64,000 bases of DNA from Mustelus asterias (lineage: Eukaryota): the NCBI RefSeq assembly GCF_964213995.1, contig NC_135830.1, positions 12,338,001 through 12,402,000 of the forward strand, read 5' to 3'. This document shows, piece after piece, positions 5,262 through 25,334 of this stretch. Position 1 is the stretch's first letter, and each line of letters starts with the position of its first letter. Both the position numbers and the translations under genes were made by a program. The notes under the pieces are model-generated. The model saw nothing but the letters and a program-made list of their open reading frames with translations. It searched no databases and had not been told where the DNA came from.

Positions 5262-5873
5262 GCAATACTGATAAGATCCGGACTCTTTATAAAGGCCTGT
5301 ACACACACCGAAAGGGTGTAAATTTGACTCCTGACTCTCAATTATCTGGTAGAATGTCGGATTTCAGTGTAACTGCTTCAATTTTAAACTTTTCTCACGG
5401 TTGCCGTTATTATTTTTTGTCCAACGTATGAGGTGTCCCTAATGGGGTTCGGGGAACTTGTCAAAATGGGTGACTGGAAGAAATTGCATGTTCTACTTTC
5501 TGCACTTTCCTGGAACGTGGTTGAGGGAGAGCGGGGCTCTGAGACACAGAGAGGAGGAGGCAGACACTGGAGGGCAAAAGATTAGAGATTGTCAAACAGA
5601 CACCGAGACGAACAGAGAGCTGGAGACTCAGAAAAACAGACAGGAGGAGACAGAGAAACACTCAGATGCTGTAATTGGGCTACAACTAACATTGTTGGGT
5701 GGCCATTTCCTGAGAACACTGTGAAACCAGCCAATCCTGTTATTGGCAACGCCCCTTAGTTTCCTAACATAGAAAGCCTGCCCGTAATAGAAAACTACTT
5801 CTTCATGCCAGAGTACAAGAGTTGGCATAATTTTAAAATTTTGCTTTTTCTGTACAATTCTAAAACGGCAAAC

Positions 5874-6329
5874 ATTTTCTCCAAACGCTGTTTACTAATA
5901 TTGTTGGCTTTGTTGCCCGCTGAGTCTGTGTTGAATAGTCATTGTCTGTTCCCAGCGTTCATTACCAGAAATTGAATAGATTCTGTAATATGTTGCAGGA
6001 ACGAATGACAAAGATGAGATGTTCCAAGGTCCCCCCGAATTAACGATACAGGAAAGACGGACCATAACACTGGGCTGCAGTTACTCGACGGCTGATGTTC
6101 GAACTCTGCTCTGGTACAACCAGCCTCGCGGGGAAGATCCGACATATTGATTGACGATATATAGCGCAGTGTGAAGATTCTCCGGATAGATTTTCTGCTG
6201 TTTTGCACAAGAAAACATAAAATGGTTCCCTCAAATATCGCCGGAACACTTCTCTCTGACAGCACTGTGTCTTTCTGTGCCATGGAGCCCACACTACTGC
6301 GGAGGTTCAGAGAATCCCGTAGAAAAACC
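5874..6329 (+). pseudogene. TCR alpha/delta-type V segment pseudogene (V1) with degenerate RSS
   Basis: Leader ATG>ATT (5874) and donor GT>CT (5920) relative to paralog V7. V exon from 5999 reads GTNDKDEMFQGPPELTIQERRTITLGCSYSTADVRTLLWYNQPRGEDPTY* (stop 6148), then frameshifts, ending LSDSTVSFCAM. Heptamer cacacta 6290-6296, 24-nt spacer, nonamer agaaaaacc 6321-6329. Confidence 0.85.
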
Positions 6330-6944
6330 CCAGACAGGGAGTTACATTTGGCGATCAGCAGAGGGCGCGCTTTCAGCGTTGAACAGAAACGATTAGCCTG
6401 TAACAGTTCACAGAATCCGACAGTGCAGAAGACACCCTTCGGCCCATTGAGTCTGCGCCGACACATGAAAGGCGCTGACCTGCCCACCTAATCCAACTTG
6501 CCAACAGAATCGAGCCAGCCAGAAGTCGAACTTGGAATAATCTGATCCGTAATCAAATGCATTATCCATTGCGCCACTGGCCTACAGTTACAGGACCATT
6601 GCTAAAATGACACAGCACAACATTCAACAAGAACAGATGAACAGCAACTGAGAAATTGAATGAGGTCTGTTTTAACTTGCATAACCTTTTCGTGTCTGTC
6701 TAAATTAATGAGCTACACTTCCTCTTTCTACAGTCTGTTTCTTGGTCGCATTTACCATAGCCGGTGCATAGTGTCTAATTGGTCAGAATGTGTTGCTGGA
6801 TTAGGCATAGTTTGTAGAAAATAATGCATTTCACAGCGCACCGATTACACTCTCTTAGTTACAGCAGTTTATTTTCCTTTCGATTGAATATTTTCTGACA
6901 AAATTGACAACCCAGTGTTTTCGCCTCAATATAACCAGGCTTTA

Positions 6945-8170
6945 ACATAAGACCATATGAAATAGGATCAGCAGAATTCCGTGCGGCCTCTCGAGTCATT
7001 CAATGGGATCGTGGCTGACCCAACATTCCTCACATTCAGTTTACTGCCCTTTCCCCGCAAGCCTCGATTCACCTACTGAACAAAAATCTATCTATCTCAG
7101 CCTTAAATATACGCAATGACTCTGCCCCCACAGCTCTCTGTGGTAAAGCGTTTCAACGACTCACAACCCTCTGAAAGAAGAAATTGCACCTCATCTCAAT
7201 GTTCCTTTTTTTTTCTGAGACTGCGCCGTCTGGTCTGAGACTCTCCCATGAGGGGAAACACCCTCACAGCATTTAGCCCCCCAAGCCTCTCAATAATCCT
7301 GCATATTTCAATGAGATCACCTCTCATTCTTCTAAATTCGAATGAGTAGAGTCCCATCCTGTTGAACCTTCCCTGATCAGAAATCCCTCTGTATTGGGGA
7401 TCATCCTCGTAAAACTTCTCTGCACTACCGCAATTAAATAATATATGTCCTTAAATAAGGAGACCAAAACTGCTTACGGTACCCCAGATGTGATCTCATC
7501 AGTATCTTGTGCAGTTGCAGCAAGACTTCAGTACTGTTATACTTCAACCCCCTTGAAATAAGGATCAATGTCCCATTTGCCTTCCTGATTATCTGCTGCA
7601 TTTGTGTGATTTTTGATTTTGTATTTTGTGCACAAGTACCTCTCAAGTCCCGTATGTCTCTAATTGCATAATACTCTGTTCTTTTGTTCTCCTTTCCAAA
7701 ATGAACATTTCCACATTTTCCCACATTAAACTGTATTTTCATTTTTTTTTGTCTACTTACTGAACTTATCAATGTCGCAACTTACCTTTCCACCCATGTT
7801 TGTGTTATCTGCAAATTTGGCGACAGTACATTTGCTTCCTCACTCCAATTCGTTAATATATATTGTAACCAGTTATGGTCCCTGGAACCCCACCGGTACA
7901 TGTCGCCAAACTGAAAACACCGTATCCAAAATTGCTGTTTCCTGCCCATTACCCAATTGTCTATCCATGCCAATATACTACTCCCAACACAATGGGCTCT
8001 TATCTTATGACTTGGCCTTTTGTTGGGTGCCTTCTCGAACCCCTTCTGGAAGTCAAAATAGAACACATCTACTGGTTCCCCTCTATCCACTCTGCTTGAG
8101 ACTTCCTCGAAAAAACTCTAAAAAGTTACTCAAACACAATTACTCTTCCCCGTTCATGAAGTCGTGATTT
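6945..8170 (-). mobile_element. Degraded CR1 LINE
   Basis: ORFs 7782..8090 (VDVFYFDFQKGFEK) and 7434..7772 (QFNVGKC...QFWSPYL), followed by a CR1 3' UTR. Confidence 0.85.
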
Positions 8171-9339
8171 TGGGGTCCGTTGCTACCCCATCCCTAACAA
8201 TAGAACTATTCTTCTTATAAGGATATTGACGATTGGGTGTTTCCAATTACTGACGGGCGGATTCACACCTACATATTCTAAAACACCACTGGGGTCACAG
8301 GGAAGGGATTTGAGAGAGTCCTCAGGCATGACAGCCGATTCTTGATTATGAAAAATTGAAGCACTTTCCTCAATCTCAAACTCCCTTTTCCAGAAAGGAC
8401 AGCGATAATGTGGTACTGGAGCACGTGAGTTGTAAGGGTGTTCAGTGGGGGCATTTCCGACAGGTAGTCGTGAAATTAACACATTTCATCTCAATTTCAA
8501 ATCATGACTTTAATCTGAAATTTTAACGCACGACAGTATGATTGTTTCTTGTTTGAACATATATTTGAGATCTGAATCATGGAGATTTTCTCACTCAGCT
8601 ACTGTCCTGAAATGTTCATACAGAAGACGTGGCTGCAATAAACATCGACCACGATATTGTATGGAGTGAAAATGTTTCACTCTGGAACCGAATTGTGCCA
8701 AACAAGCAGCATTCACAGCTTTGGCAAAGGGTTATCTGGATTCGAAACGTCAACTCTTTTCTCTCCTTACAGATGCTGCCAGACATGCTAAGATTTTCCA
8801 GCGTTTTCTCTTTTGGTTTCAGCATTTACTGTTATGGTCTGAAGATAATCGGTGAGAGCAAAAGCAGTAACAGCACCGATGAGATATTAGGACTCTCTCT
8901 AACTCTGAGCGGAGAAAGAAAACTCTGAAGAGTTGAGAACAGAGACTAACAGCCGGAGTTTATGAAGGAAAGCAGACCCGCAACCGTAATTTGGACTGTG
9001 TGACATCCTCCGTGTCGGGATTAGTGGAGAATCGTCAATGGATGAGCAATGAGCAGGTCCACTATCAGCCGCTCTGACACCTGGAGAGGAAACCGCATTA
9101 ACCTTGGATCAAACTGTCACCCAACTGTTTCCAGTAACGGCCCAGAAAACAAACTGCAGAATCCGAACAGACAGACAGATCCATTATTAAATCAGTCTAC
9201 AGGTTAGGTAGAGGGCCTTCCAGTTTCTGATAAGGTGTTAATTCACACAAGGACAGGGCTGAATATTTAGATGAGCTCCGGGAGAGATATTTCTGACCCT
9301 CAGAATAGATCCACTGACGTCACTCAGACTGCAATGTGA

Positions 9340-9885
9340 CATAGAAACATAGAAGCTAGAAGCAGGAGGAGACCATTCGGCCCTTCGAGCCTGCTCCGCC
9401 ATTCATTTTGATCATGGCCGATCATCGAATTGAATACCCTGATCCCGCTCCCTCACATATCCCTTGATACCTTCAGCCGCAACAGCTATGTCTAATTTAT
9501 TCTAGAAATCAGACAACGTTTTGACCTCAACTACATTCGGTGGCAGTGAATTCCACGCGTTCACCATCTGGTGAAGAAATATCTTCTCACCTCAGTTCTA
9601 AAAGATTTACCCCTCATCCTCAAACTATGACTTCTAGTTCTGGACTCTCCCGCCATTGGAAACATTCTTTCTGTATCTGCCCTGTCTAACTCTTTTAGAA
9701 TTTTATAAGTTTCTATGAGATCCCTTCTCACTCTTCTAAACTCCAGTGAATATATTCCTAACCGTCTGTGTCACTCCACAGATGACAGACCTACTATCCC
9801 AGGAATCAGCCTGGTAAACCTTCGCTGCACTCCCTCTATAAGCAAGGACATCAGTCCTCAGATAAGGAAACCAAAACTGCACACA
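9340..9885 (-). mobile_element. CR1 LINE 3' fragment
   Basis: 3' UTR motif ccattcggcccttcgagcctgctccgccattc with a catagaa tail. Similar to 11865-12290. Confidence 0.8.
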
Positions 9886-9907
9886 ATCCGTCACACATAT
9901 CCGCATT

Positions 9908-10010
9908 CCGACGTCATAATACTAGATACTCTGACGTCACAATGTCGGATACTCTGGTCTCACAGTGCCTGGATGTACTGATGTCACACTGCCGGGTGTA
10001 CTGACGTCAC
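9908..10010. promoter_or_regulatory. Tandem ~23-bp repeats each carrying a CRE-like TGACGTCA, upstream of V2
   Basis: Units start at 9908, 9931, 9954, 9978 and 10001. Perfect TGACGTCA in the 9931 and 10001 units. Confidence 0.6.
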
Positions 10011-10223
10011 AGAATGCTCTAACGCATGCGCACCCTCATCCCTCAAATCCCAGCGATGCTGCAGCTCCCTCACTGCTTTACTTTGTGATCACAAGTCCCA
10101 GAGACCCGGCTTTGGCTTTCACAGTGGAACTGGTGCTGGGCTCCGTTTCATATCCAATACCGTTGCTTTCCCAGGAACTCTTTCGGCTTGAGATCTATTT
10201 TACACAATTCGACGTGATCCAAC

Positions 10224-10756
10224 ATGAAGTTGAGCTTCAATTTAGTGATCATTTCCCTGGATTTCATACTCTTCCCTCAGTGTAAGTGTGGTCACTGTTT
10301 CTGACAGGAATATTTCACACACCAGATATATTGTGTTAAATTATACTCTGCTTTACTGTATTGTTTTCATTGTGTATACAATGGTACTTTATTGTGATAC
10401 ATTATAATGCGCTATTTTATTGCTGCATATGCACATTAACTTCCCAGGTGCTGCTGGCGGTGAAGAGGTATCGCAGTCTCCGGAGTTCGTGGTGGTTACC
10501 GAGGGAGCCACTGCAACATTCACATGTTCCACAACAGTTCCACAGATCCTATACTGATACAGACAATACGAGGACAGAATCGTGCAGCACCTGGTGAGCG
10601 TTACCAGGGATCCGGACAGGATCACGGCTCGGTACATTTTCTAAGAGAAACGCAGCACTCTGAAAGTTAGCGATACTCGAGTGACAGGTGCTGCCACCTA
10701 CATCTGTGCAGTGCAGGCACAGTGTTGTAAAGATCAATACGAGTCGTACAAACACC
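10224..10756 (+). pseudogene. TCR alpha/delta-type V segment pseudogene (V2) with 23-RSS
   Basis: Leader MKLSFNLVIISLDFILFPQ 10224-10281 with gtaagt donor. V exon from 10448 reads EEVSQSPEFVVVTEGATATFTCSTTVPQILY*YRQ...IF*EKRSTLKVSDTRVTGAATYICAVQ. RSS: cacagtg 10718-10724, 23 nt, acaaacacc 10748-10756. Confidence 0.92.
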
Positions 10757-11401
10757 TGCAGAGGAGCAGTCCTACTGGTTGTAGCCTGTGCTTCATCAGA
10801 AAGCTGGACATTTTATAAAACTCTCCCTGGAAAACCTCTCCCAATCTCCCAGTAAGTGAAATACACTCCTAATCTGTGTTCCTTTCTAATATCAGTCGAA
10901 AAGGAAGAAGCACTTTGAGATGTGCGTTATTGCTTGTCAAAATCCACACCAGACGCCGTGTGCTGTCCAAGGTCCTTTGTGATAATCGCTGTGCTGTTCG
11001 GTGCTTTTTAAACGTTAATTGTTCATTCCATGGGTTAAATTTAAGTCCAGATTTTTCCACATTCTGGACTTTGTCACAGAATCCAGTGAGGCAGACTCAC
11101 TGTCCTTGGATCTCTTCGAGTCTGGAAGAACATCCCACAATGATCTGTTAAACTTACTGCATATCCCTTGGCTCTCGCTACGTCGGTCGGCAGATACGAA
11201 TTTGGGTATTTTCCGAGATATTTGCTGACATGATATACGTCGGGGTATGGTGATAAGCCTGAAGATTTCCCAGACTGGCTCTATGTTGATTTCAACAAGG
11301 GTTTGAACAGCAATGCAAGTGATTGGTATAAAAACCTATCTTTGTAAACCTGGAAACAAGCTCAGCTAAAGACATCAAAGACACAGGACAGAGAGCGCTG
11401 A

Positions 11402-12390
11402 GGTTTTTGTGCAGGGTTTTAGCTGTAATCTAACGCTGTGCCTCACAGCACAGCAATAGACCGCTCGGTCCTCTCCACTGAGGCCGCTTATAACTAGACT
11501 TTGTAGACTCGTCAGCAGCCGCCAGATATCGCCCTGAGATCGCATCTTTCTTCAGTGCTACTACATTACTAATTATCCATCTTGGAGGCTCTGCCGGTTT
11601 CTGTCGATACCACTGCATGGTGTCTATAGCCTGGTCTGTATATTTGCAATCCAGCTTCGCCGAACCCCCTTCCGACAGAGTTACCGACACGGGGACTGAT
11701 TTACCGCACATAGCCCGCCTGTTAAAGTAAATGAAAAATAAGATCGCGATGAAAGAGGATCGATCTATCTGTATAAGTGTGCGCGAATTTCCATTTTCCA
11801 ACCTGCCCCTCTAAATATATACCTGATCTTTATCCATTTTAAATCGAAACAGAAAAACGTTGAAACGAGAAGCAGGAGTAGGCCAGTCGGCCCTTCGAGC
11901 CTGCTCCGCCATTCATTTTGGTCATTACTGATTATTGAGTTCAATATCCTGGTTCCCCATTCCCCAATATCTCTTAATTCCTTTAGCTCCAAGAGCTATA
12001 TCTAATTTCTTCTTGAAATCAGACAACATTTTGGCCTCAGCTACATTCTGTGGTAGTGAATTCCACACATTCTCCACGCTCTGTGTGGAAAGATTTCTCC
12101 TCACCTTTGTTCAAAATGGTTTACCCCTTATCTTCAAATTATGACGGCTAGTTTTGGACTCCCCCATCATTGGGGGCATTCTTTCTGAATCTATCCTGTC
12201 TAACCCTGTTAGAATTTTATGAGATTCTATGAGATCCCCTTCACTCTTCTAAACTCCAGTGAATATAACCCTGACCGATTTAGTCTCCAAAAATCATAGC
12301 ACAATCTATTTTATCAATCTGCTAAACTGTTTGAACGAACATAATTCATCACTTACTGTCCCAGAGCATCACCAGTATGATCAGAAACAT
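11402..12390 (-). pseudogene. TCR alpha/delta-type V segment pseudogene (V3) with 23-RSS
   Basis: Leader MFLIILVMLWD 12390-12357 with gtaagt. V exon from 11718 reads AVNQSP/SVTLSEGGSAKLDCKYTDQAIDTMQWYRQKPAEPPRWII.../AVYCCAVR with two frameshifts. RSS: cacagcg (11440-11434), 23 nt, acaaaaacc (11410-11402). Confidence 0.92.
11865..12290 (-). mobile_element. CR1 3' fragment inside the V3 leader intron
   Basis: Same 3' UTR motifs as 9340-9885. Confidence 0.8.
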
Positions 12391-13134
12391 GTCTGACCGA
12401 ATCTCTGTCAGTGAATGGGAATGGAATGAGTCAGGGATTGAGAAGGAGCGAGGGGAATCGGGTTCTGTTCAGCACATTGTTCCACATACTCACAGCAGGG
12501 GGCAGGGCCATTGCGACCTCACTCAGGAAACCATCCATATTGGCTTTGCCGTTGGACCCAGGTGACTTTCAAATTAGCATGCTTGGATTTGGAGCCCTCT
12601 GCTTAGAATGGGGGTCACTGACAGGATTTCGGGTTTGTTAATTTACATCCGAAAACACGAATATCAAGTACCTTCTTCAAGGAGGTCTACATTGAAATTG
12701 ATCAGACTGAATTATATTGCTCGCTGATGTTCAGGCAATATTTAACGTTTATAAATCATATTTAGAAACCATGGAATCATCGTTCAGTGAGACTGTCCAG
12801 ATATTGGAGAAAGTAAACTGGAATAGTTCCACGGTGGACGGCATTCAATGATCAGATGATTATGTGAAAATGAAATTGCTCTTCTTTTATCAAATAATGA
12901 AATTAGTTTCTTAATTTTAGTGCTCAGAATATTTTAAAATTTGATGCAATAGATCACGCAAAACTGTTTCAAACGGTCGATCATTCGATAATCCAAGTGT
13001 GCCAGTTTAAGAGAAGGAAAAGCATAGAATGATCGTATTCATTGCTGCCCTGTCAGTTGTTCAAAGTTGGAAACACATTGCCTAAAATGGTGGCAGAATA
13101 TTAAACACAAATGTTTAGAAGGAAATTATATGTA

Positions 13135-13545
13135 TAAGAAGGTAAGAACTAGGAGCAGGTGTCAGCCATCAGGTCCCTCGAGCCTGCTCCGCCATTCAAC
13201 AAGATAATGGCTGATCTTTTTGTGGACTCAGCTCCACTTGCCCGCCCGCTTACCATAACCCTTAATTCCTTTACTGTTCAAAAAATTATCTATCCTTGTC
13301 TTAAAAACATTCAATGAAATAGCCTCAACAGCTTCACTGGGCAGGGAATTCCACAGATTCACAACCCTTTGTGTGAAGAAGTTCCTCCTCTACTCAGTCC
13401 TAAATCTGCTTCCCCTTATTTTAAGGTTATGTCCTCTTGTTCTACTTTCACTCGCCAGTGGAAACAACTTCCCTGCTTCTATCTTACCTATTCCCTTCAT
13501 AGTCTTATATGTTTCTATAAGCTCTCCCCTTATTCTTCTGAATGT
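13135..13545 (-). mobile_element. CR1 3' fragment
   Basis: ctcgagcctgctccgccattcaac...gaattccacagattcacaaccc 3' UTR/ORF2-end motifs. Confidence 0.75.
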
Positions 13546-14046
13546 ATCTTGAACAAAGATATCCCCTCATTCTTCTGAATGTATCTTGAACAAAGAATCT
13601 GATCAGTGTGAAAAATGCGGGGATGAAAGATGATTTGGAGAACTTTTCCAAAGAGGCATAGATAGGACGAATGGCCTCAATCGGCGCTCCAAGATTCTAA
13701 GATTCTCATTGCATCGTGTCCCAGCCGCTCTACTTATTGTTGGACAACTGAACAATGAGCAGGCGCAGGATGGCCAGAGACTTTTGTAGATTCAACCGTC
13801 GCTAATTCCGCTCCACCAGCTCCCAGTGCAGCTGAGAGTCACCACACACTTCATTCAATATTGAGTCTGCCGTATCCCCGCCCACAGCTTCCGTTTGTTG
13901 TTCTCACTTTGACCCGATTGTGTGATTGGAAAGATTGCTGCATTCCTTTCATTGGTTGGATGAGCAATGCAGTGGGACGGGCATCTGTATTTCTGTCTCT
14001 GACAGAGGATTCATCTCACTGCACAGTTACAGACTCAGGAAGGATA

Positions 14047-14718
14047 ATGGTGAACTATCTCATTCCGATCTTCATCATTATCTCACTGCTCAGTAAGTAG
14101 GTTTTGGCGCAAAGGGGATCAAAGGATATGGGAGAAATGGGATCCGGTTTTTGAGTTGAATGATCAAACATTGATCAAACTGAATGGCTGGGCACGATCC
14201 AAGGGCCGAATGGACTACTCCTAATCCTATCTCCGATGTGTTTATGTATTTCCTTTCTGGAAAACCAAATGCTATTGCTAACAAATAATAATGATCGTTT
14301 TGATGACCATTTTGTTGAGGAATATTCGGCTCGTACTGATTACTTTTCTTTTTACCCTTATTTTATGTTAGAATGGAGTAGCCAAGACACAGTGGAGCAG
14401 CCGGGTGCCATAATAATAGCTGAAGAGGAAAGTAATGTCACAGTTACCTGCAACATGAAGACGAGCACTTCTAACCCTTATGTGTACTGGTATAGTCAGA
14501 GTCCCGGGCAGCCTCCACACTACATGCTTCGTATTGTGGGAGGGAAACTGTACAGACACACCGACATCAGCGACCGCTTTTCAGCATTTCAGCATTAAAT
14601 AAAACTGTCAAGATTACTGAGCTAATGATCGGCAACACGGTGATGACTGACAGTGCGGTATGTTTATGTGCCTTAGACCCCACACTGCGATAGATATGGC
14701 GGGTCCCATACTAAAATC
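14047..14718 (+). pseudogene. TCR alpha/delta-type V segment pseudogene (V4) with degenerate RSS
   Basis: Leader MVNYLIPIFIIISLL 14047-14092 with gtaagt. V exon from 14372 reads SSQDTVEQPGAIIIAEEESNVTVTCNMKTSTSNPYVYWYSQSPGQPPHYMLR...DRFSAFQH*, then frameshifted ELMIGNTVMTDSAVCLCALD. RSS: cacactg 14681-14687, 22 nt, actaaaatc. Confidence 0.9.
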
Positions 14719-15410
14719 CCACAGTAAGTATTTCAGTTGGTGCTCAGCAGAGGGCGCTCTCACGCCGTTAGACAGTAACAATAAAGTTAAAATCGCCACA
14801 GCCGCAAAGGCTGGAGGCAATTTAACCTGAGGATCACACCACATCTCAGGAGAGCGGTCAAGGTTGAGGTGGCGGCGACTTCATGAATGAACACACCGTG
14901 TACAGGTATTGAACCTATGCTGTCAGTGCTGCTTTGCGTCACAAGCCAGATATCCAGCAACTGAGCTGAACGGCAACATTCTCATCACTTACTCTACCTA
15001 TATGCGAGCATTTGTCATTCACGCACTAGGAAACGCAGATTCCTCTGAATCTAAGACCTCTTCAATCTCTCACCATTTACTTCATAAGTTTCTTTGTGTT
15101 TCTTCTTGTCAAAATGCATCACATCACATTCGCAATTTTGACTTTCTTCCTCTTCTCTTCGCATTGTTTCCCAATTTTCTGTGCTCTGTACGTATTGTTA
15201 CTGCACTTTTTTGCCTTGTCCTTCACTCATTCTGATTTGAATGTAATCTCTTCTATTTTCTTCGGATACATTTCCAACCCTTCATTTTAATCTTTTTTAA
15301 ATTTTCTGATTCAAGAAATGTTTTTCTCTCTTTCGCCTTACCATTGGAATTTAATATCGCGCTTCTTGAAACGCTGTTATTCCCGCGGAGCGGTTTTTGA
15401 AAACGGTGCA

Positions 15411-15775
15411 AGTTTTGGTACGGGACCTCCCTGTGTTTATTACACTGTGCCTCATGGTGCAGAAATAGGTGGCAGTGTCTGAAACCTGTACGTCTCTCAC
15501 AGTCAGGATGCTGAGTTTGTTGCCTTCTCCGATCGAAGTAGTGATCCTCCCGTGTTGATCGGTTCCTCTTGTGGCCATCACTGGGGCGACTGATTCGGGA
15601 GCTGTTTATACCAACGCACGATGTCAAACGGAATGGAAATAGTGCAGTTCATGGATATATTCCTCGCTCCACTGATAACCATCCGTGGAGGGAGCTGCAG
15701 CAACTCAGCTTCTCCGGTCACCCCCGTGCAGATCAGAGTGAAAAACAACAAAACGTCGATGCAAATCCTGACCAT
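15411..15775 (-). pseudogene. TCR alpha/delta-type V segment (V5): leader fused to V without an intron, frameshifted, intact 23-RSS
   Basis: MVRICIDVLLFFTLICTGVTGEAELLQLPPRMVISGARNISMNCTISIPFDIVRWYKQLPNQSPQ, frameshift near 15580, then MATRGTDQHGRITTSIGEGNKLSILTVRDVQVSDTATYFCTMR. RSS: cacagtg (15449-15443), 23 nt, accaaaact (15419-15411). Confidence 0.9.
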
Positions 15776-16394
15776 TCTCAGTTCACACACAACACCGAGA
15801 TCAGCTTTGAACCAGGCGATGAACATTAACCCGGAGCCAAGTATTTTCTTCGGGTTCAGTTCAGTGCCGTGTTTATGTTGAAGTTACAACATTAGGTGGG
15901 TTCTACTTTAGCCACTCATACTGAGCGTTTCACACTGACACAGGCCTACACAGCCTCTGAGTACACACCTGACACGCCCAGATTAAATATTTCTCACGCG
16001 ACACACTGCTCTCTACTGGTGAATACTGGTAATTGCAGGGTGCAATTCTTCACTTGGATCTTCGACAAGTTGCAGTTCACAAGATAGTTATGAATGAGAA
16101 CAGCTGTTTCCTCCTTCTTGTTATAGCTCTTTTATTGCGGGAGAGCTTACAACGTTCCTTCTGTTCTACGATCCAACGATTGCAGTGCATTTTGCTCTCT
16201 CGTTCTTTCTGAAGTCTCATTCCACATTGTGACCAGTCCCGGTGTGTTAGTCCTAAAATATCGTTCGATAATTTGGGAACTTGTGCAATGGGAACTGGTC
16301 TATCCATCGAATATTTGTTACATAACTACAGGAGTAGAAACCTTGACAACTCATAAGAATATTTCAAAAAATAATAAGTTTGTTATCAGTGATA

Positions 16395-17299
16395 AAACTA
16401 TGTTTCTGCATTTGTTCCTTCAATCAAATTTTCTTCAATAAAAACACGCGCTCCGATAATGAACTTAATGCAGTGTCCTTCTGCCCTCTCCTGGTGGAAA
16501 AAAGCACTACAATATGCAACTTTAAAATAACCTGTTTCATTTCGGGAATCAAGATTGATTCCAACAACTGCTGATCATACATTCTCCTCAGTATGAAGTA
16601 TATTTTTAATTTCTCTTCTTTTTGATTGCGCCTGGTGGTATTGAATCTGATTTTCATTGTTGCAACTCATTGATCATCCGATGTTCCAACAATCCTTTTA
16701 GAGCGGATCATGGATATTGTGTCACTCCACCTCTATCTTCAGGAGTTCAGGTAGAAGTAGAATGGATGACATAAAATCTATTTCTAATACAAGATGCGGG
16801 TTGGGGGAATAATGGTAACTGGATCTAACATCATGAAACATAGCCAGTGTTAATTCTGACAAAATACCCGATTGATGGTGATGATCAAGCAGTTTGCCAA
16901 CACCGATTTCTGCGCAACCCGACATTTCAAAAAAAATCATGTTAACCAACTCTCGGCTGCAACTAAGCAAAGCTGCCGTTTAGACCTGCGTCCAAATCTC
17001 AGTGTTCGAAAACAGTTGAACACCGGTGCAGGTACTTTCTCAGATGTGAATACCACCAGGCGCAATTAAAAAGAAGAGAAATTAAAAATATACTTCACAC
17101 TGAGGAGAATGTATGATCAGCAGTTGTTGGAATCAATCTTGATTCCAGAAATGGAACAGGTTGTTTTAAAGTTGTATATTGTAGTGCTTTGTTTTTCCAC
17201 CAGAAGAGGGCAGAAGGACATTGTATTAAGTTCATTATCGGAGCGCGTGTCTTTATTGAAGAACATTTGATTGAAGGAACAAATGCAGAAACATAGTTT
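16395..17299. repeat. Inverted repeat with arms ~16395-16650 and ~17040-17299
   Basis: The right arm is the reverse complement of the left with only scattered substitutions (e.g. aaactatgtttctgcatttgttcc / ggaacaaatgcagaaacatagttt). Confidence 0.92.
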
Positions 17300-17624
17300 G
17301 GACGAACCAACCCTTTACCGTAAACACGATTTTTTGTATAAGTATGCTGCGAATATTGCAAGTGATCGAGATCCTAAGGTCAGGGTCTACATGCGATGTC
17401 CATCCACTCTCATTCTGCGTAAATCTATTAAATAGCCAGTTCTAGCCCTCCATTCGTCCCATTTAAAAGATGGTGTTTGGCTATTTACCACATTGTTCTA
17501 TTCAATTCTCTCAGGACTCAGTGGCCTCTTGCATCAGCTACGGTGAGTTTTCACAGTTAGAGATCAGCTCTTTTAATTTGGGCTCCGGCTATGATTCCGG
17601 AACAACATTAACTAATTTCAAATT

Positions 17625-18085
17625 AAAGCAAATTACTGAGGATGCTGGAATCTGAAACCAAAAGAAAAATGCTGGAATATCTCTGCTGCTTTGGCAGCAC
17701 CTATAAGGAGAGAAAAGAGCTGACGTTTCGAGTCCGGATGACCCGTTGTCAAAGCTAAAAGGCATGAGAAGTGGGAGGTGTTTATACTTTTTGGTAAAGG
17801 AATGAAATATGAGTCATAGCCACAAAAACAAAGGGAAACGCTGCTAGCAGTCCAAAGAGAGACTAGTAGGTGTGAATGGCCAAACGACAGAGAAACTGAA
17901 ATCAGAGGGTAAGCTGTGACAGATGAAGATAAGGAGGGAGGGGGGAGATGGATGGAAAAGAGGTAAAATTGAGAAAACGGGGGGAAAGCGAAGCAAAGGA
18001 GGAGAAAAGAAATGGAAAGGGGAAAGAGTAGGAGGCGGATAAGAAAGACAATAAAGGAATAAAAGGAAGAGAACAGTTAAAAATT
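17625..18085 (-). mobile_element. Penelope-like element terminal fragment with degenerate hammerhead motif
   Basis: Minus strand 17756-17716 reads agctttgacaacgggtcatccggactcgaaacgtcagctct; adjacent purine-rich tract. Related to 8715-8826, 33880-34020, 43380-43585 and 60585-60755. Confidence 0.55.
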
Positions 18086-18407
18086 AACCGATTTCCTGTT
18101 CTCACTCCGCCTTCCAGGTTGAAGAGATTAACTGGACAAGTTTGGGTCTCATCCCTGTCCAGGTCCCCGGAAGGTGAACAAACTCACTTAGTTTCTTTCT
18201 CCCGGCGCTGAGACCCAAAGGGGCCGTGCGCTGATTGGGTCATTTGAAGACAATGGAATTCTAAGGCTGGATGTCAATGAATGACGTTGTCAGCAATAAA
18301 CCAATCAGCAATGGCCCGGATGTAACTCAACTTCATACCAGCTCTTGACAATTAAAATGTTAACTTCAACAATCTCTGCTCACATCCGCCTCGGCCCCTC
18401 TGCAAAC

Positions 18408-19336
18408 ATGTCTCCTGTGACTCTGAGCTTATTCTTCACCGCTGCAGCTCTATTAACCGGCAGGTTCACAAGTTACAAACTCTGTGTTTTACGTATTTAC
18501 CATTCACTGCATTCAATTGCGCAGTTCGATTAACACACTGGTAAAATATATATTAATTCTAATATCAATTAGAATCCACTTTGTCTCACCAAGGGAGGAG
18601 GCAAAATACTTCAGCTGAATGAGAGCGAAGAGTTAAAGTGGGATTGCAGGCCCCACTGTAGCCGGTGAGGGACTTTGACAAACTCGATAAACTGGATAAA
18701 AGCTTTGACAAACCCGAGATCTATAAACCCACGGACAGTTTAGTTTCCCCTTCAAATAACGTAAAGCGAAGGCGAGGATCTGATCTCCTTCGAAGGTGTT
18801 CATTTAACGGAGTGTCATTTAACCGCTGCAAACACGATCCCGTTACAACCTGCGTGTTGCGGGAAATATGTTTCTGTTTAGATCCTTTGATTCATTTTTC
18901 AGATTATTGGCCAGGGTGACGGGCCGAATCCGGCCATTAGACGAAGTGAACTCACGTCGTTTAATTTAGCATTACTCTTGTCTCTTACAGGACAATGTGG
19001 AGGAGATTCAATTTCACAGATGCCGGCTGCAGTCACAGAGAGTAAAGGAGATGATGTTCAGTTATTCTGTAATTATACAACTGCAAGCATTGACAATTAT
19101 TACCTATTCTGGTACCGTCAGTGTCCCAGCGGATCCATGGAGTATCTACTGATGAGAAGCAAATATACTGGGAACACAGAGAGATTCCCAGGGGACCGTT
19201 TATCAGCGGAGCTCAATGATACAACCCGCACCATTCAGCTGAAAATGTCTAAAACAGAGCTGGCAGACGCCGGTGTGTATTACTGCGCATTGAGACCCAC
19301 AGAGGCACAGAGCTGGGCTGAACCTGTACAAAAACT
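18408..19336 (+). CDS. TCR alpha/delta-type V gene segment (V6), open V exon with 23-RSS; potentially functional
   Basis: Leader MSPVTLSLFFTAAALLT 18408-18459. Phase-1 intron 18460-18990 begins GCAGGT and ends ttacag. V exon GQCGGDSISQMPAAVTESKGDDVQLFCNYTTASIDNYYLFWYRQCPSGSMEYLLMR...ELADAGVYYCALRP has the conserved Cys/Trp/Cys. RSS: cacagag 19298-19304, 23 nt, acaaaaact 19328-19336. Confidence 0.88.
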
Positions 19337-19394
19337 CTCAGAGCCTCACCCAACATAACACTGCGTTCGGCAAATATTGTGATCAGGGATCATT

Positions 19395-20455
19395 GCTTTT
19401 CAAATTGGCAGGCAGTAACTAGTTGAGTGCCACAGTTACCGGCACTAGGACCCCAGCTATTCACAATATATATTAATGATTTGGATGAGGAAACAAAAAG
19501 TTTTCAGATGATACCAAGTTGGGTGGGAGAGTGAACTGCGACGAGGATGCAGGGATCCTTCAGAATGACTTGGACAGGGTGGGTGAGTGGGCTAATCAAT
19601 GGCAGATGCCGTATAATTTGGATAAATGTTGAGGTTATTCACTTTGGAAACAAAAACAGGGAGGCAGATTACAACCTGAATTGCTGTAAATTGGGAGAGG
19701 GGGAGTGTGCAGCAGGACCTGGGTGTCCATGTGCACCAGTTACTGAAACTGAAGGTAAGCATGCAGGTATAACAGGCAGTAAAGAAGGCAGATAGCATGA
19801 TGGCCTTCATTTGCGAGAGGTTTCGCGTACAGGAGCAGGGATTAGTTGCTGCAATTATACAGGGCCTTGGTGATGCCACACCTAAAGTATTGTGTGCAGT
19901 TTTGGTCTCCTTTTCTGTGGAAGGATGTTTTTTTCTCGAAGGAATGCAGAGAAAGTTTATCAGGCTGATTCCAGGGATAGCGGGACTGATGTATGAGGAG
20001 ATTGACTAGGTTAGGACTGTTTTCGCTGGAGTTCAGACGAATGAGGGGAGATCGCATAGAGACTTATAAAATTTCGAACAGGACTGGACAGAGTAGATGC
20101 AGGGAGGATGTTCCCGAAGGTGGAGGAGTCCGGTACCAGGGGTCATAGTTTGAGAATTCAGGGTAGACCATTTAGGACGGAGGTGAGGAGACATTTCCTC
20201 ACCCAAAGAGCCTGTGGAATTCATGACCACAGGAAAAAAGCTGATGCCAAAACATTGAATGCATTTAAGAGGTGGCTGGAAATAGCACTTGGGGCGAATG
20301 GGACCCAAAGTTATGGGGAAAAAGCAGGATTAGGCTATTGAGTTGGATGATCAGGCATGATCCTAATGAATGGTGGAGCAGGCTTGAGGGGCCAGATGGC
20401 CTCCTCCTGCTCCTATCTTCTATGTTGCTATGTATGATAGAATGTTTCTATGTAT
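19395..20455 (+). mobile_element. Degraded CR1 LINE 3' part
   Basis: IYINDLDE...DDTKLGG-like and LGLFSLEFRRMRGD-like stretches; 3' UTR gaggggccagatggcctcctcctgctcctat. Confidence 0.85.
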
Positions 20456-21039
20456 GATATCTGATACGTTTAATTCAATTACATACTTTCAGTTGTACTA
20501 CATACGTCACAACAAAACATATCGATGAGAATTGGCTAGTTGTTTAATGAACACAGAAATATTATAGAGCGCTTTTCTCGATGCCTGGAATGTTTGACTG
20601 TCACGGTTATGATGTACTGGAGATAACACAGAGCACTGTATGATACATTTAATCACGAATTTTATAATGACCTGTCTGTTTATAATGGCCACAGCTGGAG
20701 GACTGGAGGACATTCAATGTGGTATCATTCTTCCTGAAGAAAGGAAAGGATAAATCAGGAAACCACAGGCATGACAGTCTGGCATCAGTGGTGGAAAACA
20801 ATTGGAAGTAATTCTGAGAAACGGAATTCATCTGCAGTTGGAGAGGCAGAGATTAATCAAGAACAGTCAGCATGGTGTTATTTGGGGGAGGTCATCCATT
20901 TCTTGCTTGCTCAGTAAACCGAATTCAAAATCCAATTCACAGTTCGCACACGAGTGACAAACATACCCAAGCTGACAAGATAAGATATTGCATCCCATTT
21001 TAGGAACATACGAATTAGGAGCGAGATTAGACAATGCTG

Positions 21040-22415
21040 AGGTCTATATCTGCTTCAAGAAGACGACCATCATCCCAGAACCAAAGAACAGCTCAGCAGC
21101 GTGCCTTAATGACTATCATCCGGTGGCTCTGACATCCAGCATTGTGAAGTGCTTTGAAAGGTTAGTCAAGGCACGGATCAATTCCAGCCTCCCAGATTGC
21201 CTGGATAAACTACAGTTTGCCGAACACCGCAACAGGTCCACTGCAGGCGCGATCTCTGTGGCCCTGCACTCAACCCTGGAACACCTAAATAACAAAGACA
21301 CCTATGGCAGACTCCTATTCATTGACTACAGCTCAGTATTTAACACCATTATTCCTGCGAAACGCATGTCCAAACTCCGTGGCCTGGGCCTGGGCTCCTC
21401 CTTCTGCGACTGGATCCTGAACTTCCTAACCCACAGACCACAATCAGTAAGAATGGGACCAGACCTCCTCTACGTTCATTCTTTATACTGATGTCCCACA
21501 ATGCTCTGTTCTCAGCCCTCCACTGTACTCCTTACAACCTACGACTGTGTGGCCAAATTCCCCTCCAACTCGATTTTCAAGTTTGCTGACGACACCACCA
21601 TAGTGGGTCGGATCTCAAATAATGAAGAGACAGGATACAGAAATGAGATCGAGAATCTGGTAACTGGTGCGGCAACAATAATCTCTCCCTCAATGTCAGC
21701 AAAATGAAGGAGATTGTATTCGACTTCAGGAAGCATAGTGGAGAACATGCCCCTGTCTACATCAATGGAGATGAAGTAGAAATGGTCGAGAGCTTCAAGG
21801 TTTTAGGCGTCCAAATCACCAGCAAGCTGTCCTGGTCCCGCCATGCTGGCACTATAGTCAAGCAAGCTCACAATTATTTTCTCAGAAGATTGAGTAAATT
21901 TGGCATGTCAGCTACGACTTTTACAGATGTACCATAGGGAGCATTATTTCTGGCTGTATCAGAGATTGGCATGGTCCCTGCTCTGCCCAAGACCGCAAGA
22001 AACTACAAAAGGTCCTGAATGTAGCCCAATACATGATGCAAACCAGCCGCCCATCCATTGACTTTGTCTACACTTCTCGCTGCCTCGGCAAAGCAGCCAG
22101 CAAAATTAAGGACCCCACGCATCCCAGACATTCTCTCTTCCACCTCCTTCAATCGGAAAAAAAGATACAACAGTCTGAGGTATGTACCAACCGACTCAAG
22201 AAACAGCATTTTCCCTGCTGCCATCAGACTTTTGAATGGACCTGCTTTGCATTAAGTTGATCTTTCCGTACACCGTAACTATGAAAGTAACACTACATTA
22301 CGCACTCTCTAATTTCCTTCCCTATGAACGGTATGCTTTGTCTGTGTAATGCGCAGGGAACAATACTTTTCACTGTATACCTATACATATTATAATAATA
22401 AATCAAATCAAATCG
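21040..22415 (+). mobile_element. Rex1/Babar-type LINE 3' part
   Basis: ORF 20988..21491 (CLNDYHPVALTSSIVKCFERLV, LFIDYSSVFNTI), KFADDTT, and an aatcaaatcaaatc tail. Confidence 0.88.
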
Positions 22416-23435
22416 ATTCAGCCCTTCGAGCCCGCTCCACCATTCTATATGTTCATAACAGAGCTCCATCTAATCCTAACTCCACTTCCCTGCCTTTTCC
22501 CCATAGCCCTTTATCCTGCTTTTGATCAAATATGTATCTATCTCTTTCCTGAATCCGTTGATGTATTTTGTATCCGCTACAGTGTGACAGTGAGTTCCAT
22601 AGATTTAGTAACCTCTTTGAGAAGTAGCTTCTCCTTATCTCTGTCTTGACCCCACACCCCCCACCCCACCCCCCACCATAATTACTCCATGACTATGATC
22701 TCTTGTCCTGGACTGTTCTAGAAGGGGAAACATCTGGTTAACAATTAATTTACCAATCACGTTGAGTATTTTATACACCTCAATCAAATCCCCACTCATT
22801 CGTCTGTACACCAGCGTGTATAAATCCAAGCTACTACACCGCTCTTCATACGACAACCCCTTCAAGATATTGACGAGACCACAGCTGGAATACTGGAACC
22901 AGTTTTGGGCTTCTTATTTCATTATTTCATTGGAAGTAGTTCAGCGAAGGTTTACGAGGATAATCCCCAGTATGGAGGGATTGTCTTACGAAGAAAGGTT
23001 AAACAGGATTGTACTCTACTCACTGGAAGTTAGAAAAACGAGATGCGACCTCGTTCAAACATATAGGATTATTGAGGGGTTTGACAGTGTAAATGCTGAG
23101 AGGATGTTCCCCTCGTGGGAGAATCTGAGGTCAGAAAACATCGTCTGAGAATAAACGAGCGCTAATTGAAAACTAAGATGAGGAGCAATTTCAATTTCTT
23201 TTTACAGAGGGTTGTGGGTCTTTGGAACTCATTGCTACAGATAACTGCGGGGCTGGAGTCATTGTGTATATTTAAGGCTGAGATAGATAGATTTTTGTTC
23301 AGTAAGCGAATCAAGTGTTACGGGGAACGGGCCGTAAAGGGTACGTGAGGAATGTTGGAACAGCCATGATTCCATTGAATGACAGAACAGACTCCAGAGG
23401 CCGAGCCTTACCCTGGCCCTTTGTCATTTGGTCTT
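22415..23435. mobile_element. Two adjoining CR1 3' fragments (minus ~22415-22865, plus ~22870-23435)
   Basis: ORFs 22635..22865(-) and 22762..23148(+) carry GLSYEER and RPQLEYWNQFWA motifs. Confidence 0.8.
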
Positions 23436-23933
23436 AAGGTTAAAGCCTGGTTCCTTTAAGCCGAAGACACTGGGCTGTCAATTCTGTCAGAAACCATTCA
23501 ATCGAAAGGAAAATAAACATTGATGTAACTAAAGAGTGCAATCGGTACATTGTGAAACGTATTCATTTTCTACAAAACTGCGTCCATATCAACAACACGT
23601 TCTAATCAGAGACACTATGCACCGGCTGTGATAAATGGGACACAGAGAGTAGAGATTGAGAATGTGTTGCTCATTAATTCAGATAGACAGGAAAAGATCA
23701 TGAAAATGCAAAACGTGAGTGAGGGCATAATAAATTGATTTGCGAAATTATTTTGCAGTACAAATGCAAGTTACAACGTGCCTAATACAATTCCTCTGTT
23801 GCTGCTCACCTGTTCATGTTGAATGTTGTGTTGTTTTAGAAACGTCCTTGAAATCTCACAGGCTAAAAAATTGCTTCTGTTCATCAGTGCGAGCGCGCCC
23901 TCTGCTGACCACTAACTGGAACTCCCAGTCTGG

Positions 23934-24378
23934 GGTTTTTGTCCGGGGTTCGCTATATCTCTGCACTAGAAATATACGGTACTGTCAGAGAGAAGTGTTC
24001 CGGCGAAACTTAATAGGACCGTTTTGCTTCTATTGTGCAAAGCAGCAGAACATCTCTCTGGAGAATCTTCAACTATGGCTCCTGTGCTATATATCGTCAA
24101 TAAATAAATCGGAGCTTCCCCGTGAGACTGGATGTACCAGAACAGAGTCGGAACACCAGCTATCGAGTAACTGCAGTCCAGTGTTCTGGTTTGTCCTTCC
24201 TGAACCGTTAATTCAGCGGGATCTTGGGACACTTCATCTTTGCCATTGGTTCCTGCAACAAATTACAGAATCTCTCAAATATCTGGGGGAGAACGCTGGG
24301 AACAGACAGTGACTATTTAAACACAGACTCACCGGGCAGGAAAACCAACAGTATTAGTAAAGAAAATTGGGAGAACAT
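23934..24378 (-). pseudogene. TCR alpha/delta-type V segment (V7), otherwise open, but lacking the second Cys and the heptamer
   Basis: Leader MFSQFSLLILLVFLP 24378-24333 with gtgagt. V exon from 24252 reads GTNGKDEVSQDPAELTVQEGQTRTLDCSYSIAGVPTLFWYIQSHGEAPIYLL...LSDSTVYF*. Nonamer acaaaaacc retained at 23942-23934. Paralog of V1. Confidence 0.92.
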
Positions 24379-25334
24379 GCTTCCTGCTCAAGAATTCCAC
24401 AATGTCATCAGAATTGTTAAATTATGTCAACTCTTCTACTCTGATGTGAAGAAGTAATTTTATATCATGGGCAGTCCTCATTTATTGGGAGACTAAGAGG
24501 CGTTACCCAATGACAGGAGTGGCTTGTTGCTCAGTGTTGTCAAAAATTGGCCACCGAACAACATTGGTTGTAGCCCAATAACTTTATCTGACTGTTTCTC
24601 TGTCTGCTCCTGCCTGTCTTTCTCTGAGCTTCCGGTTCTCTGTTTGCCTCGGTGTCCATTCCGCATTCTCAATATTTTGAGCACTACTGGGCGTCCCCTC
24701 TCTGTGTGTCTCAGAGACCCTCTTTCCCTCAATCGTTTTCCAGGAAAGGGCAGAATGTAGAACATGCAATTTCTCCCAGTCTCCCATTTCAAAAAAATTC
24801 CCCAAGCCCCATTAGGGGACAGCTGGTATGTTAGCTGAAATATCATAACGAAAACTCTGAGGAAAGTTTAAAATTGAAGCAGGTGCAGTGAAATCCAACA
24901 GTCTGCCTGATAAATGTGAGGTAGGACTCAAATTTACATCCTTTCGATGTGTGGAAAGAACTTTATTGAGAGTTCGAATCTTATCAGTATTGCTGTGGTT
25001 TCAAATTTTGTAACAAGAATAAAGTTCAACAGAAGGGCCTGGAATATTCAAAACAGCTAAAGCAATTCATTGATGAGGATTCAGACTGAAGTTCGTATTA
25101 GTTCCGTGCATGGCTCCACCTGAATTTAAGTATATTGTAATTAGAATCATGAGAACAAGAAAAAATACAGCAGCAAAATCCTGCAACAAGATCCTTCAGT
25201 AACCTGAGAATTCACTGATCTCCCAGAAGAGGCCATTTACCTCACATCACCACCAGAGGACGATCCCTCAAAGTGTTTTTGTGGTCACTGCTTCAGGAGA
25301 GGGTTCCAGAACAAATCGATATATTAGGGAGCCA

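What the first reader, a model, noticed from the sequence alone, without database searches (positions are those of the whole stretch)
6355..23908. Identical CTCF-like motif exactly 25 bp downstream of the RSS nonamer in different V families
Seen: TCAGCAGAGGGCGC occurs at 6355-6368(+), 14744-14757(+) and 23908-23895(-). Each is exactly 25 nt after the nonamer of V1, V4 and V7 and co-oriented with the V. Each is preceded at the same distance by a TT(A/T/C)CA(G/T)T element resembling the CTCF upstream motif. V1 and V7 are paralogs, but V4 is a clearly different family with dissimilar coding sequence and spacer, so motif plus spacing look selected. Known: the motif fits the CTCF core consensus, and in mouse Igh, RSS-adjacent CTCF elements promote use of proximal VH segments during cohesin/RAG scanning. 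Inference: an RSS-coupled CTCF docking system acts on shark TCR V segments, which would put this mechanism at the base of jawed vertebrates.
Basis: partly seen in the sequence, partly recalled or inferred. Interest (0 to 1): 0.85.

Follow-up and report, generated by a model that had tools for sequence, protein, structure and literature searches.

The report
CTCF-type site behind shark V-gene RSSs
Three T-cell-receptor V gene segments of a cartilaginous fish carry the same CTCF-type DNA motif at a fixed 25 bases behind their recombination signal, an arrangement known until now from mammalian antibody heavy-chain V genes, where it helps the recombinase find the V gene.

Summary
The 14-mer occurs exactly three times (0 expected). 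Each copy lies 25 nt after the nonamer of a V 23-type RSS and points the same way as the V.

V1 and V7 are paralogs in an inverted segmental duplication. V4 is another family: 45% nt in the V exon, 31% aa over 58 aligned residues. The 65 nt after the nonamer still align without gaps between the families, at 59-63% in the flanks and 14 of 14 in the core. So V4's flank is not a recent copy.

The core matches the printed CTCF consensus at 13 of 14 positions. It matches the mouse VH "RSS-associated" CTCF core at 12 of 14.

Contigs of four other species start to fit V4 exactly at the motif's first base. Their preceding letters are V1/V7-like.

Against a general rule: 4 of 7 V segments here lack the element, including the only intact one. 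All three carriers are broken genes.

CTCF binding and any role in RAG scanning are inferred, not shown.

It is best filed as a new variant of the mammalian IgH RSS-associated CTCF element. Unchecked first-reader notes report the same pattern on other pieces of this genome.

The parts
5999..6289 (+). V1 V exon, a TRAV/TRDV-like pseudogene with stops and frame changes
   Evidence: Translations. tblastn cluster 5815-6422 with 156 hits of V-domain proteins.
6290..6329 (+). V1 RSS: heptamer CACACTA, 24-nt spacer, nonamer AGAAAAACC
   Evidence: RSS scan.
6330..6354 (+). V1 25-nt linker. It holds AGTTAC at 6340-6345, which matches the upstream-motif-like hexamer at 5 of 6.
6355..6368 (+). V1 CTCF-type core, TCAGCAGAGGGCGC
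6369..6393 (+). V1 conserved block after the core, role unknown
   Evidence: 13 of the 26 columns after the core are invariant in all three copies, without gaps.
14372..14680 (+). V4 V exon, a different V family. The frame is broken by a short tandem duplication near 14581-14596.
   Evidence: In one search table 4, contigs of the other species lack 5 nt at 14586-14592, which would keep the frame.
14681..14718 (+). V4 RSS: heptamer CACACTG, 22-nt spacer, nonamer ACTAAAATC
14719..14743 (+). V4 25-nt linker
   Evidence: 14 of 25 positions identical to V1.
14744..14757 (+). V4 CTCF-type core
   Evidence: Contigs of 4 of 4 other species begin to fit here (loose ends at 14744/14745).
14758..14782 (+). 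V4 conserved block after the core
   Evidence: In one search, the loose ends 'behind' at 14780-14784 and the depth peak in bins 14734-14781 (3 of 4 runs) mark the end of the shared block.
23969..24252 (-). V7 V exon, paralog of V1. The frame is open for 98 aa, then a stop. The coding end and heptamer are deleted.
   Evidence: Alignment A1 columns 306-324.
23934..23942 (-). V7 nonamer ACAAAAACC. The heptamer is missing.
23909..23933 (-). V7 25-nt linker. It holds AGTTCC at 23918-23923, and TGG directly before the core.
   Evidence: Compared with PMC12885311.
23895..23908 (-). V7 CTCF-type core
23870..23894 (-). V7 conserved block after the core
10718..10756 (+). V2 23-RSS with no CTCF-type motif behind it (negative case)
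11402..11440 (-). V3 23-RSS with no CTCF-type motif behind it (negative case)
15411..15449 (-). V5 23-RSS with no CTCF-type motif behind it (negative case)
19298..19336 (+). V6 23-RSS, the only V with an intact reading frame, with no CTCF-type motif behind it (negative case)

Best explanation
The 14-mer is the core of a conserved CTCF-type binding element. It belongs to the 3' module of some TCR alpha/delta-type V gene families of this cartilaginous fish. The module runs: 23-type RSS, a 25-nt linker, the core, and about 25 further conserved nt, all on the V's sense strand.

Shown:
- the fixed position and orientation;
- a core kept perfectly while the flanks drift;
- presence in two V families that share only about 31% of their aligned residues;
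- the same junction in contigs of four other species.

Inferred by analogy with mouse and human IgH RSS-associated CTCF elements: CTCF bound here, with its N-terminal side facing away from the V, stalls cohesin-driven loop extrusion next to the RSS. That holds the V-RSS at the recombination centre longer and raises the use of that V. The element is family-restricted (3 of 7 V segments here), as it is in mammalian VH families.
For: - Three exact copies, 0 expected.
- All are 25 nt behind a nonamer and co-oriented with the V.
- 13 of 14 to the CTCF consensus and 12 of 14 to the mouse RSS-associated core GACCAGCAGGGGGC, both as printed in PMC6746451.
- Identity V1 against V4: V exon 45%, post-nonamer flanks 59% without gaps, core 14/14. 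P of a three-way run of 14 or more is about 0.002.
- 7 of the 8 sites in the window with at most 1 mismatch to the consensus lie in the 18-kb V cluster.
- Cross-species: in 4 of 4 runs, contigs begin to fit V4 at 14744/14745. Their preceding letters carry GGGAGTTCC, like V7's linker. Depth peaks in bins 14734-14781 in 3 of 4 runs.
- The V4-family contigs of the other species lack the 5 nt that break V4's frame here (table 4).
- The mammalian precedent has the same logic: a fixed 17-19 bp, one orientation, a core more conserved than the spacer, and only some VH families (PMC6746451). Its function is described in PMC10293834.
- A CTCF orientation code is reported in a skate (PMC10115646). The two-part CTCF motif is conserved to lamprey (PMC5504073).
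Against: - There are no binding, chromatin or repertoire data for this animal.
- All three carriers in this window are broken genes. The only intact V (V6) and three others lack the element.
- V1 and V7 are one event by descent, so there are only two independent family-level observations in the window.
- The other species are close (contigs 80-95% alike), so conservation there is shallow.
- One search printed only 40 of 194 differences, so 'no difference listed in the core' is weak.
- The spacing is 25 nt here. Measured as in the mouse paper it is 23, against 17-19 in mouse.
- The V segments lie in both orientations, which does not fit simple linear scanning for all of them.
Confidence: 0.6

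Rival explanations
1. The block is a conserved regulatory element behind the RSS, but it is used by another factor or for another purpose. Examples: an insulator between neighbouring V promoters, control of germline V transcription, or binding by the CTCF paralog CTCFL. It would have no role in RAG scanning.
For: About 25 nt after the core are also conserved (13 of 26 columns three-way invariant). This stretch does not resemble the printed CTCF downstream motif GAGCCA (PMC9004084), so something besides the CTCF core may be read there. Sharks have CTCFL (PMC7471279, abstract only, listing).
Against: The best-kept part is exactly the CTCF core. The position is locked to the nonamer, not to a promoter. 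The only known elements with this geometry are the IgH RSS-associated CTCF sites.
Confidence: 0.2
2. The similarity is history rather than function. The RSS-plus-flank module was copied or homogenised between V genes by gene conversion or unequal crossing-over, and the CTCF-like core merely rode along.
For: V1 and V7 share the element by segmental duplication. All three carriers are pseudogenes. V7's leftover spacer looks more like V4's than V1's does (alignment A1).
Against: A recent transfer would leave a long identical tract. Here identity is 14/14 only in the core and 59-63% around it. Old neutral DNA between families with 31% aa identity should not align without gaps at all. The same junction is kept in four other species.
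Confidence: 0.15
3. The motif is carried by a transposable element that happens to lie behind these V genes, as SINE B2 does for CTCF sites in rodents.
For: A high-copy repeat lies only about 50 nt further on, at 14806-14853, with depth in the thousands in all four runs. CTCF-like motifs also sit in the arms of an inverted repeat at 16481-16494 and 17200-17213.
Against: All 3 exact copies are at the same distance from a nonamer. The block is in no repeat family of the window other than the V1/V7 duplication. Its depth in the other species is tens to hundreds, not thousands. The repeats that follow V1, V4 and V7 differ.
Confidence: 0.03

Closest known systems
RSS-associated CTCF-binding elements of mammalian IgH VH segments (mouse proximal VH such as VH5-2/VH81X; human VH)
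   Same: A CTCF core on the V sense strand, at a fixed short distance behind the nonamer of a V 23-RSS. The core is as conserved as the RSS while the spacer between them is not. It occurs only in some V families (11 of 16 mouse, 3 of 8 human) and in one orientation relative to V transcription (PMC6746451, passages). The core sequences are 12 of 14 identical.
   Different: The locus here is TCR alpha/delta-type V genes, not IgH. The taxon is a cartilaginous fish. The distance is 25 nt to TCAGCAG, or 23 nt counted as in the mouse paper, against 17-19 (mouse) and 19 or 48 (human). There is an additional conserved block of about 25 nt after the core. Binding and function are shown in mouse (PMC10293834, passages) but not here.
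Two-part (upstream + core) vertebrate CTCF sites
   Same: V7, and the V1/V7-like contigs of four other species, carry AGTTCC 9 nt before the core. V7 has TGG directly before the core. This fits 'CTGCAGTTCC-like' plus a spacer of roughly 7-10 bp (PMC12885311, passages). It also fits the 5-6 bp spacing to the extended core (PMC9004084, passages).
   Different: Only the 3' six letters of the 10-nt upstream motif match. V1 has 5 of 6 and V4 is weaker. The papers give several different spacer figures, so the spacing test is soft.
Promoter-side CTCF sites of mammalian Tcra/Tcrb V segments
   Same: CTCF sites associated with TCR V segments. The statement that these sites are promoter-side is recalled. 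Of the Tcra/Tcrd papers I saw only the search listing.
   Different: Those sites lie on the promoter side. The shark element lies behind the RSS. One CTCF-like motif (16006-16019, minus) does lie upstream of V5 in this window, but it was not examined further.

Membership tests
RSS-associated CTCF-binding element (IgH VH type) | Match to the CTCF core consensus | tested here: met
   13 of 14 to CCASYAGRKGGCRS and 12 of 14 to GACCAGCAGGGGGC, both as printed in PMC6746451.
RSS-associated CTCF-binding element (IgH VH type) | Fixed short distance downstream of the nonamer of a V 23-RSS | tested here: met
   25 nt in 3 of 3 copies. The value differs from the 17-19 bp of mouse.
RSS-associated CTCF-binding element (IgH VH type) | Same orientation relative to V transcription | tested here: met
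   3 of 3 are co-oriented with the V, including the inverted V7.
RSS-associated CTCF-binding element (IgH VH type) | Core more conserved than the spacer between RSS and core | tested here: met
   Core 14/14. Linker 14 of 25 (V1 against V4) and 16 of 25 (V7 against V4).
RSS-associated CTCF-binding element (IgH VH type) | CTCF occupancy in developing lymphocytes | not testable with these tools
   The runs listed carry no library description, and none is on record as RNA. Read laying gave contigs only.
RSS-associated CTCF-binding element (IgH VH type) | Raises use of the adjacent V by impeding loop extrusion at the recombination centre | not testable with these tools
   This needs mutation and repertoire or 3C data. 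It is described for mouse in PMC10293834.
Two-part CTCF site (upstream motif + core) | Upstream motif at the published spacing 5' of the core | tested here: inconclusive
   AGTTCC lies 9 nt before the core in V7 and in the loose ends of 4 of 4 other species. V1 has 5 of 6 and V4 is weak. Only 6-7 of 10 positions match the printed motif.
Transposon-borne CTCF site | Motif embedded in a dispersed repeat consensus, without fixed relation to genes | tested here: not met
   All 3 exact copies are RSS-linked. The block is in no repeat family other than the V1/V7 duplication. Depth is moderate in the other species against thousands for the neighbouring repeat.

The most novel reading that the evidence does not exclude
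Coupling of a CTCF element to the V 23-RSS is ancestral to jawed vertebrates. On this reading the shark TCR alpha/delta V elements and the mammalian IgH VH RSS-associated elements descend from one V-RSS-CTCF module of the early antigen-receptor locus. Cohesin/CTCF-guided presentation of V-RSSs to RAG would then be about as old as translocon-type V(D)J loci. An abstract reports elasmobranch IgH genes linked near the TCR alpha/delta locus (PMC12227049, listing), which would fit a shared origin.
Probability: 0.3. Interest if true: 0.85.

Novelty: new variant of a known kind. Interest (0 to 1): 0.66.

Why it matters
RSS-associated CTCF elements are a key part of the current model of how RAG scans chromatin in the mouse IgH locus. 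In the papers I could search they are described only for mammalian Ig loci: all 9 papers holding 'RSS-associated' and CTCF, judged by title.

The same geometry behind TCR V genes of a cartilaginous fish would mean one of two things. Either the coupling is much older than the mammalian IgH locus, or it evolved twice. Both outcomes bear on how long-range V(D)J recombination was organised in early jawed vertebrates.

It also gives a concrete 65-nt element to test by EMSA, CUT&RUN and repertoire analysis in sharks.

Tried and rejected
That confirms only the TCR-V nature of the query.

2. One scan of metagenome contigs for the end of the nonamer, 23-27 nt and the core gave 4 loci. All have 50-61% G+C and no V-gene context, so I judged them microbial chance matches. 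Rejected.

3. Chance. Rejected.

4. Recent duplication of V4's flank from V1/V7. Rejected, because the flanks are 59-63% alike.

5. The site at 12592-12605(-), 2 mismatches to the 14-mer. tblastn found no V gene beside it, so it is treated as unrelated.

6. J segments in the window. A regular expression for the J-region motif found none in six frames. The position of the recombination centre relative to these V segments is therefore unknown.

7. The published CTCF downstream motif does not explain the conserved 25 nt after the core.

8. The search of earlier findings by sequence was blank.

9. Supplementary tables of PMC6746451 (site lists, other loci and species) were not opened. They may hold TCR-locus sites that bear on novelty.


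Full report
**What is in the window**

The window has no N. An RSS scan, frame translations and a local tblastn of 150 V-domain proteins agree on seven V gene segments. All lie between 5.8 and 24.3 kb, in mixed orientation.

| V | Strand | Heptamer at |
|---|---|---|
| V1 | + | 6290 |
| V2 | + | 10718 |
| V3 | - | 11440 |
| V4 | + | 14681 |
| V5 | - | 15449 |
| V6 | + | 19298 |
| V7 | - | lost; nonamer at 23942-23934 |

The spacers are of the 23-nt type (22-24 nt). I found no J-like segment. The best protein relatives of the V7 frame include a little-skate protein (49% identity), a bamboo-shark protein and TCR alpha V regions of other vertebrates. So these are TCR alpha/delta-type V genes of a cartilaginous fish. 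Unchecked first-reader notes place a NAR-TCR cassette about 12 kb before the window.

Only V6 has an intact frame. The other six have stops or frame changes.

**The observation**

The 14-mer occurs exactly three times, at the stated places. None of 100 shuffles gave any match. With up to 3 mismatches there are 7 matches against 2.9 expected.

Each exact copy starts 25 nt after the last base of the nonamer of V1, V4 or V7, on the V's sense strand.

V2, V3, V5 and V6 have nothing similar in the 70 nt behind their nonamers. The count is therefore 3 of 7.

**Is V4 independent of V1/V7?**

V1 and V7 lie in an inverted segmental duplication of more than 2 kb, with arms 75-83% alike (pairs I5, I6, I10, I11, I19, I20, I22). 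They count as one event.

V4 is another family. Its V exon is 45% identical in nucleotides to V1 and V7 (alignment A1). V7 and V4 share 18 of 58 aligned residues.

Behind the nonamer the three sequences align without any gap for 65 nt.

| Comparison | Flanks around the core | Core |
|---|---|---|
| V1 vs V4 | 30 of 51 (59%) | 14 of 14 |
| V7 vs V4 | 32 of 51 (63%) | 14 of 14 |
| V1 vs V7 | 38 of 51 (75%) | 14 of 14 |

Further downstream identity falls to 29-45%. At the three-way invariance rate of the flanks (0.51), a run of 14 or more invariant columns in 65 has a simulated probability of about 0.002.

The flank of V4 is therefore homologous to that of V1/V7 but old. The perfectly kept island coincides with a CTCF-type core.

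**Is it a CTCF-type site?**

The core matches CCASYAGRKGGCRS at 13 of 14 positions. Together with its two preceding bases in V1, it matches the mouse "RSS-associated" core GACCAGCAGGGGGC at 12 of 14. Both consensus strings are as printed in PMC6746451 (passages read).

In the window, 8 sites have at most 1 mismatch to the 14-letter consensus. Three are the RSS-linked ones, and 7 of the 8 lie inside the V cluster. With a recalled 15-letter form and up to 2 mismatches, there were 16 sites against a mean of 3.2 in 30 shuffles.

An upstream element is plausible. V7 has AGTTCC 9 nt before the core and TGG directly before it. PMC12885311 (passages) describes a "CTGCAGTTCC-like" upstream motif and a variable spacer of roughly 7-10 bp. 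PMC9004084 (passages) gives 5-6 bp to the extended core. V1 keeps 5 of 6 of that hexamer, and V4 is weaker. I rate this as suggestive only.

**Other species**

The look-up of sequencing runs listed the source organism plus five other coded organisms that hold 5-9% of the sampled words. I laid contigs of four of them (X6, X13, X15, X16) on 14350-15050 at 80% likeness or more. Between 55 and 75 contigs were laid per run. None was 99% or more alike, and most were below 95%. They are therefore other species or paralogs.

Three results bear on the finding.

- In all four runs there are contigs that begin to fit V4 exactly at 14744 or 14745, the first or second base of the core. Their unmatched letters before that point read, as printed:
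  - CTGGGAGTTCCGGTTAGAGA (X6)
  - AGTTCCGGTTAGAGA (X13)
  - AAACCCCAAGATGGGAGTTCCACTTACAGA (X15)
  - AAAGCGCCAGATGGGAGTTCCGCTCAGAGA (X16)

These are V1/V7-type linkers, not V4-type. In two read-outs the nonamer end is visible (AAACC in the X15 string; AAAACC in a further X13 loose end at 14735), and counting from it gives 25 nt to the core. The same junction therefore exists behind another V family in these species.
- Loose ends "behind" cluster at 14780-14784. Summed depth peaks in bins 14734-14781 in 3 of 4 runs:

  | Run | Depth in bins 14734-14781 | Neighbouring bins |
  |---|---|---|
  | X6 | 501-537 | roughly 55-180 |
  | X13 | 112-164 | roughly 8-50 |
  | X15 | 160-199 | roughly 80-110 |
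  | X16 | no peak | - |

  The block shared between families therefore runs from the core to about 25 nt beyond it.
- Longer pieces span V4's exon end, RSS and core, for example X15 record 13 (14593-14795) and X6 record 29 (14593-14885). So V4-family members with the element exist there too. At 14586-14592 contigs of X6 and X16 (1+3+1 nt) and of X13 (2+3 nt) lack 5 nt. X15's contigs are mixed. Removing 5 nt joins the two reading frames that are split in the window's V4.

Limits of this evidence. Only 40 of 194 differences were printed. None lies in 14740-14888, but that is weak. Depth of contigs is not copy number.

**What speaks against a general system**

Four of seven V segments lack the element, among them the only intact one. 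The three carriers are pseudogenes in this assembly. The window gives only two independent family-level cases. V segments point both ways, so a simple deletional scanning model cannot hold for all of them. The distance differs from the mammalian one. No binding or chromatin data could be reached.

**Known relatives**

PMC6746451 (passages) describes mouse IgH RSS-associated CTCF sites:
- they are as conserved as the RSS, while the spacer between is not;
- they occur in 11 of 16 mouse and 3 of 8 human VH families;
- more than 98% of mouse VH-domain CTCF sites share one orientation.

The paper states that sites in the other antigen-receptor loci are much less abundant. Its supplementary tables were not available to me.

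PMC10293834 (passages) summarises the function. The RSS-associated element of VH5-2 impedes extrusion past the recombination centre, and its deletion cuts VH5-2 use 50-fold. PMC7930373 (passages) gives the convergent orientation of VH sites and 3' sites. PMC10115646 (passages) reports a CTCF orientation code and loop extrusion in a skate. PMC5504073 (passages) reports the two-part motif in lamprey ChIP-seq. So the machinery is expected in sharks.

**Novelty searches**

| Search | Result |
|---|---|
| CTCF / shark / recombination signal / T cell receptor | 147 papers with at least 3 of 4 terms. Judged by the titles and abstract beginnings of the 20 listed, none concerns CTCF at shark V genes. 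The two shark TCR papers listed have 0 occurrences of CTCF. |
| CTCF / Tcra / V segments / CBE / RSS / Tcrd | 19 papers, 12 listed, all on mouse by title or abstract |
| "RSS-associated" + CTCF | 9 papers, 8 listed, all on mammalian Ig loci by title |

Subscription journals and supplements are outside this search.

**The scan's own notes**

72 notes of this genome hold the word CTCF. At least nine titles describe a CTCF motif 22-26 bp behind V-RSSs on other pieces of the genome. They are unchecked AI notes. I could not read those windows, so they are leads only. They do say that the scan has met this pattern before on other DNA of the same genome.

**Verdict**

The best reading is a selectively kept, RSS-coupled CTCF-type element of some shark TCR V families. 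It is the same kind of thing as the mammalian IgH RSS-associated CTCF element, in a new locus and lineage and with a different spacing. Binding and function are inferred.

Noticed in passing
14581-14596: A short tandem duplication in V4 splits its reading frame. Contigs of other species lack 5 nt at 14586-14592, which would keep the frame (table 4). It may be a real pseudogenising change or an assembly slip.
   Followed up: partly
23943-23968 (minus): V7 lacks about 19 nt that V1 and V4 have at the coding end and heptamer (alignment A1 columns 306-324). Its nonamer and CTCF-type element are intact. Another first-reader note (s1-894164) reads this as a RAG scar. That was not tested.
   Followed up: partly
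5260-7381 and 22984-24995: An inverted segmental duplication of more than 2 kb, 75-83% alike, carries V1 and V7 with their flanks.
   Followed up: partly
14806-14853: A short stretch about 50 nt behind V4's element has summed contig depth in the thousands in all four other species. It is a high-copy repeat, probably SINE-like.
   Followed up: no
16395-16642 and 17049-17299: An inverted repeat pair, 92-95% alike (I9 and I17), whose arms each hold a CTCF-like motif at 16481-16494(-) and 17200-17213(+). It is possibly a transposon with terminal inverted repeats that carries CTCF-like sites.
   Followed up: no
16006-16019 (minus): A CTCF-like motif with 1 mismatch lies upstream of V5 and is co-oriented with it. 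That is the promoter side, where, by recall, mammalian TCR V genes have their CTCF sites.
   Followed up: no
6369-6393, 14758-14782, 23870-23894: About 25 nt after the core are conserved between V families and are shared with contigs of other species. They do not match the published CTCF downstream motif. Their role is unknown.
   Followed up: partly
5800-24300: Six of the seven V segments have stops or frame changes and only V6 is intact. This is a pseudogene-rich part of the V array, with V segments in both orientations.
   Followed up: partly
50860-51545: A long TG/CT-rich degenerate tandem array (family D1).
   Followed up: no
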